Assembly: GCA_001642005.1 (NCBI GenBank)
Contig: LWCA01000034.1
Coordinates: 8,462 to 72,461 of the forward strand
From: Intoshia linei
Lineage: Eukaryota > Animalia > Orthonectida
Reading direction: 5' to 3'
Length of the DNA stretch: 64,000 nt
The notes below the pieces were generated by a model, which saw nothing but the letters and a program-made list of their open reading frames with translations, did no database searches and was not told where the DNA came from. Below are positions 1 through 8,900 of this stretch, piece after piece. The position numbers and the translations under genes were made by a program. Position 1 is the stretch's first letter; each line of letters begins with the position of its first letter.

Positions 1-240
1 TTTAAGATTGGACTGTTTTTACTTTATTTTAATATTATACACACATTTTGTCTAACAAATTAAAAAAATGGGATAATAATTGTTTATAAATTCTTTACGC
101 AAATGTTAACAAAACAAAAAAAAGGATTGATAATAGTTAGTAGAATTTTTAAGTTAGATTTTCAACGTGAATTTATTTTTTTGGTATAATTAAAGAGTGC
201 CCTCGGCAGAGCTAGGTGCTGTTTGTACGTAGTACAAAAC
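1..240 (-). repeat. Dispersed repeat family A, partial copy (reverse orientation)
   Basis: Reverse complement matches about 4589-4905 and 9383-9730 (TGTACTACGTACAAACAGCACCTAGCTCTGCCGAGGGCAC...AAATAAATTCACGTTGAAAATCTAAC). Confidence 0.85.
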
Positions 241-849
241 TGCCAAGATAGTATAATATATTAATATAATAAGTATTAAATAATTTTTTAAAGAATCGGA
301 GACTTTGACAATTTTATTATTTTATAAAGTTAACTACTTTGGTTATAACCTTTAATTTAAAATTTAATGTCAATGAATTCTTCGCTCATATGTTTAAAAT
401 CCAATGCTTGTCAATTTTTCATTTACAAATTGGCGAAACGTTTTTGATCAAATCTCGTAGTCTAGATTGATGACCTCGCATGGCCTGATCGCCGTCGGAA
501 CAAATACCAATATATTTTTCCATCTAAATCGCTATTTTGTTCTCCGATATAAGTTTACAAAATATCATGTTGTTATTATTAACATCATTATTTATGAATC
601 TCACATTAGCAATTGTCTAATTTAGTGTTTTGTACATTTATGTCTAAATTAGCATTTTCTAATTTTTTTTAAAAATTTTTTTAAAATAATGTTCAAAATA
701 TCTAGCGCCACCCACTTTGGCGAACACTAAAATAATACTTTTTGTATTCTATAACTATATTATGTATTACAAATTAAATTATTTGGATTGAAATTGTGAA
801 TTTTAAATAGAATTTAAATAATAAATTTATGAAAATTACTTTTAATTAG

Positions 850-3800
850 CAAAACGCGATACATGTTTTACTCCAGAAGTTTATAAGGAATGTAAAAAAG
901 CTAATAAAAATGATTGTGATGAGAATAATTGTCAATGGTACGAGCATCAATGTGAAAGTATATATTAATCTATATATATATATATATATATAAATACATT
1001 AACATAATATTACTTTAGATTATTAATTATACAATTGTCCATTAACACGTGTTATTGAACAACATATTTTGCCTATGTAAGAGTAGTTAGCATGTAAATA
1101 TGAAACGAAAAGTTGTATTTCGAATAAGACGTTATAATTAAAAATAATATAAATAAATAATAATCTGAATACCTCGCTAAAAAAATGGATGAATATAACG
1201 CAATTTTTAAATGCAGGTAAAATGTACAGCTTTTAAGTTTTTTTGATAATATTTTACTTGGCTTAAAGTTAATGGCTTTGTAAACCCGCCTAATTTTTAC
1301 TTTTATCAAAAACTTCACAACTCGATACATAAGTCAAACTGTTGTCAAATGAGATAAATACAATATCACGTACATGAATTTGTTTTAATTTCAGTTTGTC
1401 AATCTATATTTTAGTTAAAATGTTCGTGATAGCTAATTTTTTGACTTTACTAGGTTAATTTGGGTCGATTTGTTCCCATATTGTCAATAATATTTTTATA
1501 TTTTCTTGTTCCGTATTTAAAGGGCTTTGGAATGATATAAATTATAATATTCTATACAAAAGTTGTTTTCTAGTCTTATACAGAGCTGTTGAGAGCCAGT
1601 AGTAGACCCGGGCCAAATGGAAATGTAGGCCCTATAAAAAATTTTTAAAAAATGGAACCTCTATACATTGTTTAATCAATTGTTCATTATCTTAAAATTA
1701 AAAATAACCGTTAGAAATTCCATTGGGTATTTGAAATTTTGGTATAATTAAGAAATTCCCAACATTACCTATTAATAAATTAAAAAAGTAGGCCCTCCTG
1801 ATTGTAGACCCGGACATATGGCTCCAAGTCCCATTTCCAGGGTCCGGTTCTTATAAAAAATTGAATTTGATGTTACATTATATCTCGTAAAATGTATGTA
1901 GCGGAATTATTATAATAATGCTTATAATTATTAACTAAAATAATATTTATATCAAGATTTGAAATAAATTGCGGAGAGAAAAATTGCTTAATTTATTAGC
2001 AAAGGATAGAGATGACCTTAAAGTTTAGACATAAAAAATTTGATTTTGATTTCTTCATAAAATATTGATTAATAAAATTGTAATTTTTGACTATGAAGGT
2101 GCAAATTTCTGATACTGAAATGTATCATACAACAGTCGAAGGAAAAAAATTGCATTATAATGTTTTTTCAAGATTCTAAGATTCTTAATTTTTTATATAA
2201 TCGGTAACACGTGGGACATGAATTGGTAAATAGCCAATGTAATTAATGTGTGTTGTTATTATTTGATATGTATTTTTTTAAGTGTTTTGCCATGGACATT
2301 AAGTTTATTTGGATTCGATGTGTCTAAATCAGGGTGGTCCAAACACATGGCGATTGAAGGCCAAAAAGTCAAAATTTCACAAATTAATCAGAAAATTATT
2401 ACCGTATCATAATATAAATATTGTGCCAATTAAAAATATAATTAGAATTTTATAAAGTTATCATAATATAAAAGGTCCCAAAAGTTATTATCGTAAAGTA
2501 CAAAATTACTTAATTATTAATAGTTACATTATACATGTAGTAGTAATAAATGTACTTTAAATGGGAGTTTTTAGGAAATTTTTTTTGAACCTAACTTTCA
2601 AAAGGGGTTTTTAATATTTTTTTTGGAATTTATTGTTTTTGGCATATATACATGCAATTGTCTCGTAAGGGTTAAATATGCCACTACAATCGAAATATTT
2701 ATTGATAAGTCTAAACTGGTAATGTCCCTTGTGTTTAGAACATTGTCTATGTAATTTTGACCATTACGCGTGAATTATACTGTATTAAAACAATTTAGAT
2801 AAGATTAGCCCCATTATTTGTAATGTTTGTGATAATCAAGACGAATGTGATGTGAGGAAGGGGTGTTTTTGGAGAAATACGAATCAATGCGGTATCATTT
2901 TATTCATTAGAATATTAGTTATTAAAAAGTATCATTTACATAAATATAAAGATAAATTAACATAACTAAAAAAGTTAATAAACTATTATGATCTTATATT
3001 AGTGAAATTGATAGTGATCGATTAGTAAATTTAGATATTTTATAAAAAATTTTTTGAAATCATTTCAATTTTAGTAATACATTTAATTAGTACCTTTAGA
3101 TAGCAGCGATTTTAATTAATAATTACTATTATAATTATGTTGTGGTTTTAGGTCACTTTGAGTATGTTTTTAACAACTTCCATTTTATACATTCCATATT
3201 AATACAGAATTTTATATAAAAAATATGGGACGTTGAGAGTATACAGAAAACGGTCCAAGGCTAATCGTACTCATAAGTTGACTTAAAATAAATATTAAGT
3301 TAAAAGAAACCATTTAGATCAGGGGTGCACAACCTGCGGCCGTGGGCAATCCATGTCATCATAATCCAATATATCATTTTACTTCAAATTCAAGGGAAAT
3401 GTTTTTATCAAAATGTTAAATTTTTGACCACTTTCTCAAAATGGATTTAAACTCTCTCAATGTAAAATTAAATTTTGTGCGACCGTAGTATCAATGAGTA
3501 AAGTAGCTTTGCGGGTGAATTAATGGAAAGGTTGTGCACCCTAACCTAGATCAACCATTTTCAACGGTATCCATGTGGACCCCAGCTGTACACAGCGGTT
3601 TTTTGAGTCCACGAAAAATTTTACAGTTATATTATTGAAAGAAATAAAAAAGTGAAAATTGATATTTCAACAGTCATTTAAGTTTTTGTGTGTTTCGAAA
3701 AAATCATTTAAAAATCACATAATGAAAAAGGTGGATAAATTTCAATTGTTAATATTACAAAGTTAACAAAGTTTAAAAGGAATGTTAGTCTTGAACGCTT

Positions 3801-5818
3801 TAAAATTTAAATGTGTAACTTTTAATTTTTTTTAGTAATTGTGAATAGTTGTACTGATATAAATTCAAATACTGTTTGCAAATTAAATGATTGCAACTGG
3901 AAAGAAGACTTTTGCGATATAGGTTACTTTTAAATAATTTACCCCAATCATAAATTTAATTATCAAAACATTGCAAGAATAATTAATTAGGGTGTTATTA
4001 ACTGTTTCAGATTAAAAAAAAATTATTTAAAATTTTAGTTGAAGCCACCTGTCCAACAGATTTTGAATTAAATAAATGTAAAAGTCAAACTAAACAATCG
4101 GATTGCGAAGATAAAAAATGCAGCTGGCATACAACCCAATGCAGAGGTTTTGATAATTTTCAAATTAAAAATTGAATCCATTTAAACAATTCAGATAATA
4201 GCCTTGAAATCAAATGTAGTTTATGTGATTATGATAAATGTTTGAATTTAAAAGGTTGCATGTGGAACGATGATGTTTGTGGTAATAAATATAATATTTA
4301 TATATTGTATTTTTGTATTTCACAGTAAATTTGACAAAATGTAAAGAAGCCAAGAATAAACATTCCTGTCAAGTAAATGGTTGTTGGTGGAATAAACCTG
4401 TTTGCGTTATTAGTGGTTATTAAACGTAAATACACGTGTATATAATTATATTAGAAGATGAAGTAGATGCCAAAATATGTTCCCTTATAGTGAATACACA
4501 TGACTGTGAACAACAAAAATGTAAATGGAATGAAGATTTCTGTCGAGGTTAAAATGTTAATAATATAAAAAATTTGAGTGACTGTACATTGTACTAAGTA
4601 CAAACAGCATTTAGCTCTGCCGAGGACACATTTTTATTCTACCAAAAAAATAAATTCACGTTGAAAATCTAACTTAAAAATTCTACTATTCACTATTATC
4701 CATAAACAAGTGGTTCCCAAACTTGTTTCAGGTGGAACCATCATATGACATTACTTTTTACTTTAAAGTGAATTATTCCATTTTAATTTTTTGTTTGTTA
4801 ACATTTGCGTTAAGAATTTTAAAAACAATTGTTATCTTATTTTTTTAATTTATTAGACAGAATGTGTGTATAATATTAAAAATAAAGTAAAAACAGTCCA
4901 ATCCTAAAAATTGTCATAAATAGCATAAATTCCAAAAAAATAAAATTAGTCCAATACTAAAAATTGTCATAAAGGTGTGAGTTTTGGAAATTGAAATTTA
5001 TATTATTATATGTAAAATTTGTCATAAATAGTATAAAATCCAGGAAAAATAAAATTATAAAAACATATTTTGTAATTTTCAATGTGATGATATATATTCA
5101 GTACCAATTTAATAAATACTTAAAAATACCCAATATATATCATAATTAACCGAATCTTCATTTTATAAATTATTTTACTGTGTAAACTTAACAGCATGGT
5201 TAAAATTTTTCTACCACGGGCTAGTAATTTCACGTATCACTTACTAAGTCAGTGACATATCGGTCAGTGATTTTTATATCAGCCTCAAGGACAATCCAGA
5301 CGATTTATAAAATATTTTAAATTGTATTAAAAATTTTTATATTTTTTAAAACAAAAAGGAGTTCTCATTCTAGCGTGGTCAACACATGATCCTTATAGAT
5401 TCGGCTAAAAATGAACAATTAAATTCATAATTAGTAATGGTACAATTAATAGGGTCAAAAATCTATTTATATGAATAAAGAAAAATAATAATAATCCATC
5501 GTGTTCAACCCTTTATTAAAAGTGTACCTATTAAATTTGCTAGGATTTTATTTATAAATATTTGATAAAATGTAATTTAAATATTTAAATAGATACAACT
5601 AAATGTGATGGCATTGACTGTAAAAACTGCGATAGTACCCAAGGTTGTTGTTGGCAAAAACATGAATGTGTCGGTAAGTTAATTATATACAATCATTATA
5701 CACATTTTCTAAAATTAATTTTATGATAGAAAAAGATACCTGCGATACTGACAGTTTTGCAAATAAATATACATATTGTGGAGTTTTCATATTATATTCA
5801 ATACTCATAGTATACTAA
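850..5818 (+). CDS. Cysteine-rich modular surface protein, probably GPI-anchored, 5' incomplete
   Basis: Exons bounded by AG/GT, all phase 1: 850-957 (KRDTCFTPEVYKECKKANKNDCDENNCQWYEHQCE), 2799-2891 (KISPIICNVCDNQDECDVRKGCFWRNTNQC), 3836-3922 (IVNSCTDINSNTVCKLNDCNWKEDFCDI), 4039-4146 (EATCPTDFELNKCKSQTKQSDCEDKKCSWHTTQCR), 4195-4281 (NSLEIKCSLCDYDKCLNLKGCMWNDDVC), 4326-4415 (NLTKCKEAKNKHSCQVNGCWWNKPVCVIS), 4455-4547 (DEVDAKICSLIVNTHDCEQQKCKWNEDFCR), 5593-5673 (TTKCDGIDCKNCDSTQGCCWQKHECV), 5730-5818 (KDTCDTDSFANKYTYCGVFILYSILIVY*, hydrophobic C-terminus). Start exon not found. Confidence 0.85.
3320..3543. mobile_element. hAT-type MITE (CAGGGGTGCACAACCT TIR)
   Basis: CAGGGGTGCACAACCT...AGGTTGTGCACCCT, flanked by ATTTAGAT/ACCTAGAT. 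Related ends at 31758 and, inverted, about 57060-57128. Confidence 0.7.
4589..5130 (+). repeat. Dispersed repeat family A with about 53-bp tandem units
   Basis: High similarity to 9383-9955. Contains AATCCTAAAAATTGTCATAAATAGCATAAATTCC units. Confidence 0.85.
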
Positions 5819-5909
5819 TGCTTTCTCGTTAAATTATTATTTATTAAATAAATATTCATCACATTATATATTTATATTTATAAAATTTTAATTTATGAAT
5901 AATATATAT

Positions 5910-8900
5910 TTAAAAATAATTATCATCGTCTTCAGGATTATATCGCGGTTTAGAAGATTTGGCTCGGTTTATTCTACCAGATTTTGCGTTTCTAGGAATT
6001 TCAGTTTCATATTCAGAGTCTGAATTTTTATCGTAGTCTACAGAGATATTTGAATTCTATAATTTTATTTAATTTTATTTTTAATTTTAATTACGTCACT
6101 ATCCAAGTTGAATTCGATATCATTATTTTCATTTGAATACTCTAAAAATAAATTAATATATATTTATTAGTGTTGCGATTCGTAATTTTTTTTGGAGTGC
6201 TCTGAAATTTTTTATAACAAAATCTGATATTATTACCTCCAATGGAGGTATAAAATTTCGATGAAAGAATAATGGAATCAAAAAATTGATATTAAAGTAA
6301 AACGGTTGGAACCATAACCCTTTTGCAAGCCGAAATTTACATATACATTGTACGTTATTGTATGTAAGGATTTTAATTTATAATTATCAATTAAAATCTA
6401 TCAAACTATAAAAATTATAAATATCTACTACATGTTAATTTTTAGCCTCTCTAATACCCTAAATTGAGAATGGTGCAGCATATCGTGATGTACCGTATTA
6501 TCTAAATACATTACTTGATTCACTCGATGAAGCATCAGAAGAAATTGAGGCAAGATTTTCATTACTTGATAATCTAGATATGCGGTTTTGTATTTCCTAA
6601 AGTTTAATATATAATTTTTTAATGTATATAATTTAATTTAAAATTTAATTGCATCAATTTAAAAAAAATTATTTTTTTAATAATTTTCAAAGTAGATTTT
6701 TTGGAAAAAACGTTTAAAAAAAAAAGATTTACTGAAACATAGAACTAAATGTAGTAATAATGTATAATATTAATGTACCTTTTGGAATTCAATATTTTTC
6801 TTAGTATATTCTTGAATCAATACTTCATATTGGTGTTTATTACGAAAAACATCCATATATCTCTCATATAAAACTTTTAATTCTTCTTCATATGTTTCAA
6901 ATTCGTCCATGTAAGCAGGTCTAAAAATGATACAAATTTAAAATTAATATGCATTAAATTAAAAATCTTAAAATTTAAATTGTAATTTTAATTGTTTTAA
7001 CTTAAATTCAATTTTCTTAAAACACTATAAATAAATCCATTTAAGTATGGATTGAACGATTCAATTTGACACCAGCAAAAGATGATGAAATTATCAGATG
7101 GTATATTATAATATTGATATCCTTTACTTAAATTTTACATAAAATGGAATGTTCATTTTGTCTGTTTGTTATTGAATATTAAAAAAATTAAGAGTCGTAA
7201 ATTTAAAAAACCCATTTAAAATTTCCCATAAATTTTTCCCATACGCATAGGGCGTGTGTATGTCTATTTTTCTGTTAAAGAATTTGAGTACTTCATGGTA
7301 TAAAACCCAATTTGCCCTTTTAAATTTGCCAATTAAAAATAAAATGAAATTAAAATAGTCTAATTAATTAGAATAGAATAATTACTACACAAAGTAAAAG
7401 AATCTAATATTTCTAAAATATTAAAGTCAAATTGAGATTATCAATCATAGTTTGATTTGAAGAAATTTGTATCGCTTGTTTAAACTTTATTATATGAGCA
7501 CACTTTTTACATTTTTAATATGAAAAATTTATATAAAATTTAAGTGTGCGATTTAAAATGAACACCCTGTAGATGCTGTTTGCACATAATACATAACAGT
7601 CAACCCAGTATTTTATATAAAGCATATAAAATTTTAAATTACCTCACATTTTGCAAGGTTTCAAGTCTTTTAGAATTCCTAGTTAATTCAGCCGTTTTTT
7701 TATTTATTTTTGATTCAATATTTTTACTGTCACCTTTGACTTTTTGTGTATCTTTTTCAATATTCTCAATAGATTTCTAAATGTTTAAATCAAAATTGTT
7801 TAAATTCTCGAGCCGTATTAATTAATTTTAAACAGATTGTAATGTTATTAAAACTAGTTAAAATGATGATATTGTCTAATTTTTTATCATTTTCACTCTA
7901 TTAATCACTATTTACTTCATACATAATAGTAGTATATATTTTTTTGGATTATAATCGAATTATTATTATATATTGAAGTTTAAATTATAAAATACGTAAT
8001 TTAAAAATTTCTAATGTAATTATTGAAATTCCTGAGTCAAGACTGTTAACTAATACCTTTAAATGTATATAAAAAAGGTATGATTCCGAGAAAACATTTC
8101 TGAGGTAAACACCATAAAATTTTTCTATTTTGTAATATTGGTTGGTTGTGCAGCATTTCATTCTTAACTGGGGTTTGAAAAACCAATTCTATCTTTTAAA
8201 TGTATGCATATATTTCGTTTTAACTGCTTTATAATAATCTATTCATTTCCATGTTTAATTAATTATATGTGACTATAATAGACTGGTTATAGTCAGTATT
8301 TATTTTTAAAATTCTAATGCAATAATTTTTCTACAAAACCGTAGACCGAATTCATATTTGTATACTAATTTTGAATTAGTTAATATGTATACATACCTAC
8401 ATACATACATACATACCTGATACAGGTTGTCAAAGAGCATAGAAAAAAACACCCAAAAGCTAAAAAATCAGATTATGTAAAAAAATAAATATTACCCTTA
8501 CCGGGGCAGGGGAAATTTTTATAATTTTGAAAAAAATTTTTTGTGGTATGCTCCTACTTATACAAAATGGGGATGGTATGCAAAAATAGTTTTTGAAATT
8601 CAAAAAAAAAACTCAAAAATGAATCACCCTAATATGTATATTCCAACAGTACAAATTGTTTCAGATCTCAAAATACAGTATTTAAGCCAGTGTTCGTCAA
8701 ATTCTTTTATTAGTCCACTTCTACAGGACTAAAAAAATGTCAAAAAATTCAAAAATAATTAATTAATTTCAGTTGTAAAAACAAATTTTAAATATTTTGT
8801 AGTACAATTCACATTTGATTTTAATTTAATTGTAATTTATGCCTTTAATTTAAAGGTTTTATCTGCTTTTTCTAATTTTAAATTCTCTATCTCGCCAACC

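What the first reader, a model, noticed from the sequence alone, without database searches (positions are those of the whole stretch)
850..5818. Hidden exon-per-module cysteine-rich surface protein: candidate variable surface antigen
Seen: eight consecutive internal exons (108, 93, 87, 108, 87, 90, 93 and 81 nt), all multiples of 3 and all phase 1-1. Each encodes one mini-module C-x(4-8)-C-x(4-5)-C-x-W-x(4-5)-C with highly divergent non-Cys residues, and the last exon ends in a hydrophobic tail with no cytoplasmic segment (GPI-signal-like). None of this appears in the ORF track. Known: symmetric phase-1 exons typify shuffled extracellular domains, and CxW..C repeats resemble PSI modules and ciliate surface-antigen repeats. 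Inference: any exon can be skipped, duplicated or swapped in frame, so this could be a diversifiable coat or host-interaction protein system in a reduced animal genome.
Basis: partly seen in the sequence, partly recalled or inferred. Interest (0 to 1): 0.85.

Follow-up and report, generated by a model that had tools for sequence, protein, structure and literature searches.

The report
Expressed cysteine-module surface protein gene, orthonectid
The stretch holds a real, spliced and expressed gene of the parasite Intoshia linei for a secreted, probably lipid-anchored protein made of ten tiny disulfide modules, one per exon; it is already annotated as a hypothetical protein, and nothing yet shows that it is a variable antigen.

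Summary
Eight internal exons of 108, 93, 87, 108, 87, 90, 93 and 81 nt, all GT..AG and phase 1-1, are followed by a terminal exon with a hydrophobic tail. Spliced contigs from three public runs confirm every junction.

The gene is longer than reported. A signal-peptide exon and two more module exons lie upstream of the window, giving 12 exons and about 345-350 aa. It is already public as OAF71652.1, a hypothetical protein of Intoshia linei.

Each exon encodes one module, C-x7-8-C-x3-5-C-x-W-x4-5-C. No Pfam family reaches its threshold. The best matches by sequence profile and by fold are the structured regions of the trypanosome VSG C-terminal domain, followed by PSI. All these matches are weak.

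About 23 further modules, mostly 81-nt phase 1-1 exons, lie on six other contigs, so the family is small. Similar modules also occur in unnamed metagenome proteins.

The variable-antigen idea is not supported. Only one isoform is seen, and genome and RNA contigs differ at about two exon positions. Between two duplicated copies the exons are more conserved than the introns.

Earlier scan notes cover the same stretch (s1-778097) and report a similar 31-exon gene elsewhere in this genome (s1-778016), which I did not locate.

The parts
850..957 (+). Module exon M3 (108 nt, phase 1-1, 5 Cys). It is spliced directly to module M2, which lies upstream of the window at contig C2212:4425-4493. M1 is at C2212:3003-3089. 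The signal-peptide exon is C2212:2860-2920, or 2909-2954 in the public model.
   Evidence: The RNA contig pieces and the loose end before 848 match the end of M2.
2799..2891 (+). Module exon M4 (93 nt, phase 1-1, 5 Cys)
   Evidence: Records 9 and 14 run on from 957 to 2799, and the joint 2891>3836 is seen.
3836..3922 (+). Module exon M5 (87 nt, phase 1-1, 4 Cys)
   Evidence: joints.
4039..4146 (+). Module exon M6 (108 nt, phase 1-1, 5 Cys). It is the closest relative of M3.
   Evidence: joints. Weak Pfam hit to Trypan_glycop_C, E=0.12.
4195..4281 (+). Module exon M7 (87 nt, phase 1-1, 5 Cys). It is the closest relative of M4.
   Evidence: joints.
4326..4415 (+). Module exon M8 (90 nt, phase 1-1, 4 Cys). 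It carries the only N-x-T sequon.
   Evidence: joints.
4455..4547 (+). Module exon M9 (93 nt, phase 1-1, 4 Cys). This is the module that was folded. All three runs show G>A at 4490, a Val>Met change.
   Evidence: AlphaFold model with pLDDT 80.9.
5593..5673 (+). Module exon M10 (81 nt, phase 1-1, 6 Cys, with GCCW)
   Evidence: joints 4547>5593 and 5673>5730.
5730..5818 (+). Terminal exon. It has two Cys, a polar spacer with small residues, then 11-12 hydrophobic residues up to the stop (5816-5818). This looks like a GPI signal. RNA contigs end at 5846 and 5866.
4589..4892 (.). Dispersed MITE-like repeat inside the M9-M10 intron. An inverted copy lies at window 16-237, in the M2-M3 intron. Such repeats explain the long introns.
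   Evidence: depth spikes and many 90-95% contigs.

Best explanation
This is an expressed 12-exon gene of the orthonectid parasite Intoshia linei, public as OAF71652.1 (hypothetical protein, 345 aa). The product enters the secretory pathway through an N-terminal signal peptide. It consists of ten tandem mini-modules of 22-35 residues. Each has four invariant cysteines (presumably two disulfides) and one invariant Trp, predicted to fold as a short helix plus a beta-hairpin.

The protein ends in a short hydrophobic tail with no cytoplasmic part. The most likely fate of that tail is replacement by a GPI anchor. The result would be a rod- or bead-string-like, acidic, disulfide-stabilised protein on the outer face of the parasite's cell membrane, serving as a coat or adhesion protein.

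It belongs to a small lineage-specific family. All members use one module per phase 1-1 exon, and the family grew by duplication of exons and multi-exon cassettes.

Shown: the gene model, its splicing, its expression, the module pattern, the paralogs, and the presence of GPI-transamidase genes.

Inferred: GPI anchoring, the surface location and the role.
For: - Gene model: exon ends, phases and splice sites. Every junction in the window, plus the M2-M3 junction, is seen in spliced contigs of 1066 and 1085 nt from three runs.
- Public protein: P0001 = OAF71652.1 has 10 profile matches.
- Membrane signals: the only hydrophobic segments are at the N-terminus and the last 12 residues; the protein has 48 Cys (13.9%).
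- Module pattern: invariant C, C, C, W, C across 31 modules.
- Fold: the single-module model has pLDDT 80.9, with a helix plus a hairpin.
- PDB by sequence: two independent module profiles each have VSG C-terminal-domain subdomains as their best or only PDB hit.
- PDB by fold: an all-against-48,161-chain search gives only three chains at Z>=2, namely two VSG C-terminal domains and one plexin PSI.
- VSG literature: the structured regions of the VSG C-terminal domain are described as four conserved cysteines plus a conserved aromatic residue, next to the GPI anchor (PMC12226131).
- GPI machinery: PIG-T and GAA1 are present, and there are two collinear weak C13-peptidase matches.
- Paralogs: 81-nt phase 1-1 exons, and a signal-peptide exon on C2556.
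Against: - No GPI predictor was available. The omega site is only guessed, and the hydrophobic tail is short.
- The PIG-K matches are below threshold.
- No localisation or stage data exist, and the runs are coded.
- All similarities to known domains are below curated or conventional thresholds: E 0.011-0.96, Z 2.2-2.6, and Pfam 13.2 bits against a 21.4-bit cut-off.
- The full-length AlphaFold model is poor, with pLDDT 40.
- Exon 1 is ambiguous between two canonical phase-1 donors.
Confidence: 0.72

Rival explanations
1. This is a diversifiable variant-antigen system. Because every internal exon is phase 1-1, exons are skipped, duplicated or swapped. The parasite would thereby display changing coat isoforms to the host.
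For: - All internal exons are symmetric.
- Cassettes were duplicated together with their introns: C249 and C520 are 91% identical, and both run into the module that ends contig C2556.
- Non-Cys residues are very divergent between modules, about 30% identity.
- The modules resemble part of the trypanosome VSG.
Against: - Only one full-length isoform appears in three runs, although contigs drop rare forms.
- The exon sequence of RNA contigs and assembly differs at about 2 positions.
- Only about 33 modules on 7 contigs were found.
- Between the duplicated copies, exons are more conserved than introns, and pN/pS is 0.76 on only 5 changes.
- The VSG part it resembles is the conserved, buried C-terminal domain rather than the variable part (own knowledge; PMC3025347 title and abstract seen).
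Confidence: 0.07
2. This is a secreted structural protein, for example of the cuticle, extracellular matrix or egg/larval envelope, and it is not membrane-anchored. The hydrophobic C-terminus would be retained or trimmed without GPI addition.
For: - It has a signal peptide and tandem disulfide modules typical of matrix proteins.
- The tail is only 11-12 residues long, and no omega site has been verified.
- The catalytic transamidase subunit was detected only weakly.
Against: - A polar spacer containing small residues, followed by a purely hydrophobic stretch ending exactly at the C-terminus, is the classic GPI-signal layout (established knowledge).
- The GPI-transamidase subunits PIG-T and GAA1 are present.
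Confidence: 0.18
3. This is a chance pattern or a pseudogene, with no functional gene.
For: None found.
Against: - The motif is about 20-fold enriched and clustered on one strand.
- There is an open frame across 12 exons with canonical sites.
- Fully spliced contigs are seen in three runs.
Confidence: 0.01

Closest known systems
Structured regions (S, S1, S2) of the Trypanosoma brucei VSG C-terminal domain (Pfam PF10659; PDB 2JWG, 2JWH, 5M4T, 1XU6)
   Same: - Both are small domains of about 25-35 residues with four conserved cysteines and one conserved aromatic residue. The spacing is the same, C-x7-8-C-x4-5-C-x-W-x4-C.
- Both lie directly before a GPI signal.
- They are the best or only PDB hits for two independent module profiles.
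- They are the top two of 48,161 chains by fold: Z 2.6 and 2.4, rmsd 2.6 and 1.8 A over 30 residues, and 37% identity to 5M4T.
   Different: - VSGs have one or two such regions below a large variable N-terminal domain. Here ten stand in tandem and no other domain is present.
- The Pfam score is below the cut-off (13.2 against 21.4 bits, in 1 of 31 modules).
- The host organism is an animal rather than a kinetoplastid, so common descent is unproven and convergence is plausible.
PSI (plexin-semaphorin-integrin) domain, PF01437
   Same: - Both are extracellular and Cys-rich, with a Trp-centred C-x-W motif.
- Weak fold matches: plexin A2 PSI2 at Z 2.2, rmsd 1.6 A over 26 residues, and a Foldseek match to the MET receptor chain.
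- Phase-1 exon modules are typical of animal extracellular domains.
   Different: - PSI has about 50 residues, 8 Cys and a C-x-W-C motif. These modules have 4 Cys and C-x-W-x4-C.
- Pfam PSI finds two true PSI domains in this genome but none of these modules.
- hhalign probability against those two PSI domains is 0.5% and 7.6%.
Unnamed tandem repeats (C-E-D-Y-T-x4-C-E-A-A-G-C-Y-W-Y-N-G-S-C-H type) in metagenome proteins P0002-P0008 and P0012, and the protist-like P0010
   Same: - The Cys/Trp spacing is the same, with shared N-x2-[DE]-C and G-C-x-W positions.
- There are 6-10 tandem copies and a C-terminal membrane segment.
- Profile E-values reach 1.5e-14. hhalign probability is 61% and 48% over the whole module.
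   Different: - These proteins lie in intron-less, prokaryote- or virus-like contexts. They are often fused to beta-propeller or PKD-like parts, and they end in a true TM helix plus a basic tail.
Trefoil (P-type) domain, PF00088
   Same: - Seven of 31 modules give weak hits, best E 0.0046.
- The top Foldseek row is maltase-glucoamylase. From my own knowledge, not verified in the alignment range, this protein has an N-terminal trefoil domain.
- Both share an E-C-x3-G-C-C-W-like centre.
   Different: Trefoil has six cysteines in a three-loop pattern and about 40 residues. The hits are below threshold, and the module lacks the first and last trefoil cysteines.
Cys-rich repeat surface antigens of protists (Giardia VSP PF03302, Paramecium surface antigen repeat PF01508)
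   Same: The general design is shared: signal peptide, tandem Cys-rich repeats and a membrane anchor at the C-terminus.
   Different: - Neither family matched any exon or the whole protein.
- There is no CXXC periodicity.
- Those systems have large repertoires and controlled switching, which is not seen here.

Membership tests
PSI domain (PF01437) | Score over the Pfam gathering threshold | tested here: not met
   No PSI hit at E<=10 for any exon or module, or at E<=1 for P0001. A genome-wide PSI search hits only C2005 and C1879.
PSI domain (PF01437) | About 50 residues with eight cysteines and a C-x-W-C core | tested here: not met
   Modules have 22-35 residues, four invariant Cys and C-x-W-x4-5-C. 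hhalign probability against true PSI domains is 0.5% and 7.6%.
PSI domain (PF01437) | PSI fold | tested here: inconclusive
   Plexin A2 PSI2 gives Z 2.2 and rmsd 1.6 A over 26 residues, rank 3 of 48,161 chains. Foldseek E is 8.3 to the MET chain.
VSG C-terminal domain (PF10659) | Score over the Pfam gathering threshold | tested here: not met
   Only M6 matches, at 13.2 bits against a 21.4-bit cut-off (E 0.12). There is no hit for whole P0001.
VSG C-terminal domain (PF10659) | Structured region with four conserved cysteines and a conserved aromatic residue (PMC12226131) | tested here: met
   C, C, C, W and C are invariant in all 31 modules. The definition was read.
VSG C-terminal domain (PF10659) | Significant sequence similarity to solved C-terminal domains | tested here: inconclusive
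   2jwg gives E 0.011 with A1 and 0.1 with A3. 2jwh gives E 0.96 with A2 and 7.3 with A3. These are the best, or the only, PDB hits of each profile.
VSG C-terminal domain (PF10659) | Same fold | tested here: inconclusive
   2jwg at Z 2.6 and 5m4t at Z 2.4 are ranks 1 and 2 of 48,161 chains. The Z values are low because the domain has only 30 residues.
VSG (whole protein) | Large N-terminal variable domain (PF00913) | tested here: not met
   P0001 has no Pfam hit and consists of modules only.
Trefoil (PF00088) | Six cysteines in the trefoil pattern, and a score over threshold | tested here: not met
   There are four invariant Cys. Seven of 31 modules give weak hits, best E 0.0046.
Giardia VSP / Paramecium surface antigen repeats | Match to PF03302 or PF01508 | tested here: not met
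   Neither is listed. A genome search with PF03302 gives nothing over the cut-off, and nothing at these loci.
GPI-anchored protein | N-terminal signal peptide | tested here: met
   Both candidate first exons give a hydrophobic N-terminus ending in phase 1. This was judged by sequence only; no predictor was run.
GPI-anchored protein | C-terminal signal: small omega residues, polar spacer, hydrophobic end, no cytoplasmic tail | tested here: inconclusive
   The tail layout fits by eye. No GPI predictor was available.
GPI-anchored protein | The organism has the GPI transamidase | tested here: met
   PIG-T at 94.9 bits and GAA1 at 49.9 bits are over their cut-offs. For PIG-K there are only two collinear sub-threshold matches.
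GPI-anchored protein | Lipid anchor demonstrated biochemically | not testable with these tools
   Needs PI-PLC release or mass spectrometry.
Variant surface antigen system | Large repertoire of alternative genes or isoforms | tested here: not met
   About 33 modules on 7 contigs, several of them fragments of one array. One isoform is seen in three runs.
Variant surface antigen system | Diversifying selection or high polymorphism | tested here: inconclusive
   Exons are 97.6% identical against 92.4% for non-exon sequence between C249 and C520. pN/pS is 0.76 from 5 changes. There are about 2 exon differences between RNA and assembly.
Variant surface antigen system | Switching or mutually exclusive expression | not testable with these tools
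   Only contigs of three coded runs were available, with no stage or time series.

The most novel reading that the evidence does not exclude
An animal parasite, an orthonectid, coats itself with GPI-anchored proteins built only from VSG-C-terminal-domain-like mini-modules. It diversifies this coat by duplicating or skipping symmetric exons. The same uncurated module would be an ancient or repeatedly invented extracellular building block, shared with kinetoplastid VSGs and with surface proteins of uncultured prokaryotes or their viruses.
Probability: 0.1. Interest if true: 0.75.

Novelty: new variant of a known kind. Interest (0 to 1): 0.42.

Why it matters
Almost nothing is known about the molecules that orthonectids display to their hosts. 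This gene is a concrete, expressed candidate for a surface or coat protein, and it comes with a small family of the same exon-per-module design. That makes it a practical handle for localisation studies in the plasmodium and in free-living adults.

The module itself is not covered by any curated family. Its nearest solved structures are the GPI-proximal regions of trypanosome VSGs, and it recurs in many unnamed metagenome proteins. Defining it as a domain family would annotate those proteins. It would also allow a test of whether the VSG C-terminal fold is older and more widespread than thought.

As a claim of antigenic variation, the finding is currently weak.

Tried and rejected
- **Pfam, exon by exon and on the public protein:** no family over threshold.
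- **Word-based homolog search with P0001:** only the protein itself.
- **phmmer of P0001 against the PDB:** nothing.
- **ESM Atlas:** only unnamed clusters at 0.90-0.92, and structural TM scores of 0.32 or less.
- **Full-length AlphaFold without an alignment:** pLDDT 40, not usable.
- **Foldseek on the module model:** three rows, all with E above 5.
- **PSI membership:** rejected.
- **C-terminal tail exons of the paralogs:** a crude script search gave nothing convincing in this AT-rich DNA.
I tried to locate it with a Pfam VSP search of the genome and failed.
- **Literature:** no hit for the accession numbers, and nothing on orthonectid cysteine-rich surface proteins.
- **Which first exon is used** (ATG at C2212:2860 with donor after 2920, or ATG at 2909 with donor after 2954): this could not be settled. 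The single read-laying run covered only the window, and the contig-length arithmetic fits both.
- **Joined model:** Exons were searched one by one by reference. Whole-protein steps used only the public database entry P0001 that a search returned.
Full report
**Where the window comes from.** The window is G000:C2212:8462-72461 of a 41,603,068-base assembly in 3520 contigs, with about 25% G+C. A profile search returned the public protein of this locus, OAF71652.1 / A0A177BDF9, 'hypothetical protein A3Q56_00547 [Intoshia linei]', on a 72,461-base contig. The organism is therefore the orthonectid parasite Intoshia linei.

**The observation.**
- Six-frame scans find C-x-W-x(4-5)-C nine times in the window, against a mean of 0.46 (maximum 3) in 200 shuffles. 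Eight of the nine lie on the + strand between 850 and 5670.
- Around each motif there is exactly one AG/GT pair that gives a phase 1-1 exon: 850-957, 2799-2891, 3836-3922, 4039-4146, 4195-4281, 4326-4415, 4455-4547 and 5593-5673.
- The terminal exon is 5730-5818.
- A scan of both strands of the 64-kb window for phase 1-1 AG..GT pieces with four or more Cys returns these eight exons (several with alternative ends) plus three unrelated places that lack the motif.

**RNA evidence.** One search found three small runs from 2024, all from one study and held as contigs, that carry exon words. Laid on window 600-5900, contigs of 1066 and 1085 nt join all exons at exactly the predicted GT..AG borders. 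The loose end before position 848 reads the end of an upstream module exon.
- Only the full-length form is seen. Contigs cannot exclude rare isoforms.
- The exons differ from the assembly by G>A at 4490 (Val>Met) in all runs, and by one more letter in exon 2799-2890 in two runs.
- The contigs end 28-48 nt after the stop codon.

**The whole gene.** The 8.4 kb of contig upstream of the window (L003) holds two more module exons, C2212:3003-3089 and 4425-4493. Both are phase 1-1.

A first exon with a hydrophobic N-terminus ends in phase 1. There are two candidates:
- ATG at 2860 with the donor after 2920 (my reading, G at position -1);
- ATG at 2909 with the donor after 2954 (the public model).

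I could not decide between them. Either way the gene has 12 exons and encodes a 345-350 aa protein: a signal peptide, ten modules and a tail.

The short introns are 39-116 nt. The long ones (0.9-4.8 kb) carry dispersed repeats: window 16-237 has an inverted copy at 4589-4892, and depth spikes there.

The public protein has 48 Cys (13.9%) and one N-x-T sequon, and is net acidic. Its only hydrophobic segments are at the two ends.

**The module.** Alignment of the ten modules shows five invariant positions, C-x(7-8)-C-x(3-5)-C-x-W-x(4-5)-C. M3, M4, M6 and M7 each have one extra Cys, and M10 has two. M3 is closest to M6, and M4 to M7. This fits the old cassette duplication noted in s1-778097.

**Paralogs.** Profile searches of the whole assembly find no further copy of this exact type. 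They do find a second subfamily, C-x8-C-x4-C-x-W-x6-C, usually followed by G, on contigs C2556, C249, C520, C2692, C3414 and C3017. That is about 23 modules.
- Nearly all are 81-nt phase 1-1 exons.
- C2556 starts with its own signal-peptide exon ending in phase 1.
- C249 and C520 are 88-91% identical over their whole length, introns included. Both run into the module that ends contig C2556, so the assembly has broken a tandem cassette array.
- Between these two copies, exons are 97.6% identical and the rest 92.4%. There are 4 non-synonymous changes and 1 synonymous change. This indicates constraint on the exons rather than diversification.

**What the module resembles.**
- *Pfam:* nothing passes a Pfam threshold. 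M6 gives Trypan_glycop_C at E 0.12. Seven subfamily-II modules give weak Trefoil hits, best E 0.0046. There are no PSI, Giardia VSP or Paramecium antigen hits.
- *PDB sequences:* the A1 profile (this gene) has VSG ILTat1.24 C-terminal subdomain 2jwg as its best hit (E 0.011). The A2 profile (paralogs only) has the second subdomain, 2jwh, as its only hit (E 0.96). The joint profile hits only these two.
- *Fold:* a single module (M9), folded with the 31-module alignment, gives pLDDT 80.9 with a short helix and a hairpin. Aligned against 48,161 PDB representatives, only three chains reach Z 2:
  - 2jwg: Z 2.6;
  - the VSG M1.1 C-terminal domain 5m4t: Z 2.4, rmsd 1.8 A over 30 residues, 37% identity;
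  - plexin A2 PSI2: Z 2.2.
- *Foldseek:* the three weak rows are maltase-glucoamylase, 2jwg and MET.
- *VSG literature:* the structured regions of the VSG C-terminal domain are defined by four conserved cysteines and a conserved aromatic residue, and they sit next to the GPI anchor (PMC12226131).
- *True PSI domains:* those of this genome are found elsewhere and align to the module profile only locally, with probability 0.5% and 7.6%.

My conclusion is that the module works like, and looks most like, a VSG-C-terminal-domain or PSI-type mini-domain. It is not a demonstrable member of either family.

**Wider distribution.** The A1 profile against 1.84 billion representative proteins gives 27 hits at E<=0.001.
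- Besides the protein itself (2.9e-73), the best are unnamed metagenome proteins with 6-10 tandem modules of the same spacing and a C-terminal TM segment.
- One of them lies in a contig of small co-directional ORFs that looks like a virus or mobile element.
- hhalign of the module profile to two such proteins gives probabilities of 61% and 48% over the full module.
- No Pfam family covers these repeats.
- No animal ortholog was found.

**Anchor.** The tail has small residues (S, A, N), a polar spacer and 11-12 hydrophobic residues ending at the stop codon. That is too short for a transmembrane helix and matches the layout of a GPI signal (established knowledge; no predictor was run). The genome encodes PIG-T and GAA1 over threshold, and shows two collinear weak C13-peptidase matches.

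**Verdict.** The most likely reading (about 0.7) is a secreted, probably GPI-anchored string of ten disulfide mini-modules on the parasite surface. It is one member of a small lineage-specific family that grew by exon and cassette duplication.

The variable-antigen system is possible in principle, because all exons are symmetric. It has no positive support and several indications against it (about 0.07).

Whole-protein steps used the public entry returned by a search.

Noticed in passing
window 16-237 and 4589-4892; also L019 about 3350-3620: A dispersed MITE-like repeat lies in inverted orientation in two introns of the gene, with arms 92% and 77% complementary. It is also present in an intron of the paralog on C2556. 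RNA contig depth there is 10-40 times that of the exons, so many transcripts or loci carry it.
   Followed up: partly
L003 about 1520-1826, minus strand (contig C2212, upstream of the window): A divergently oriented single-exon ORF of about 100 aa has a signal peptide, a Thr/Asp/Asn-rich stretch, one TM segment and a short basic tail. It is a small membrane protein next to the module gene.
   Followed up: no
P0002-P0008, P0012, P0032 (metagenome proteins); L037/L038: This is a large, unnamed class of proteins with 6-10 tandem C-x7-C-x4-C-x-W-x4-C-H modules and a C-terminal TM plus Lys-rich end. No Pfam family covers them. One is encoded in a virus- or mobile-element-like contig of small co-directional ORFs with an RHH protein.
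   Followed up: partly
G000 contigs C249 (1-1166), C520 (1-1294), C2556 (13623-13703): Two short contigs are 88-91% identical copies of a four-module cassette, introns included. Both end in the module that ends contig C2556. The assembly has evidently broken a tandem array, so the gene and module counts of the family are lower bounds.
   Followed up: partly
window 5819-6980 (downstream): In run X1 an 1800-nt contig continues 1082 nt past position 5900 into the region of a minus-strand gene. The 3' ends of the two convergent genes may overlap, or the contig may merge two transcripts.
   Followed up: no
My module profiles did not hit it, so it probably uses a different module. Exon-per-module Cys-rich surface proteins may be a wider theme in this parasite.
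   Followed up: no
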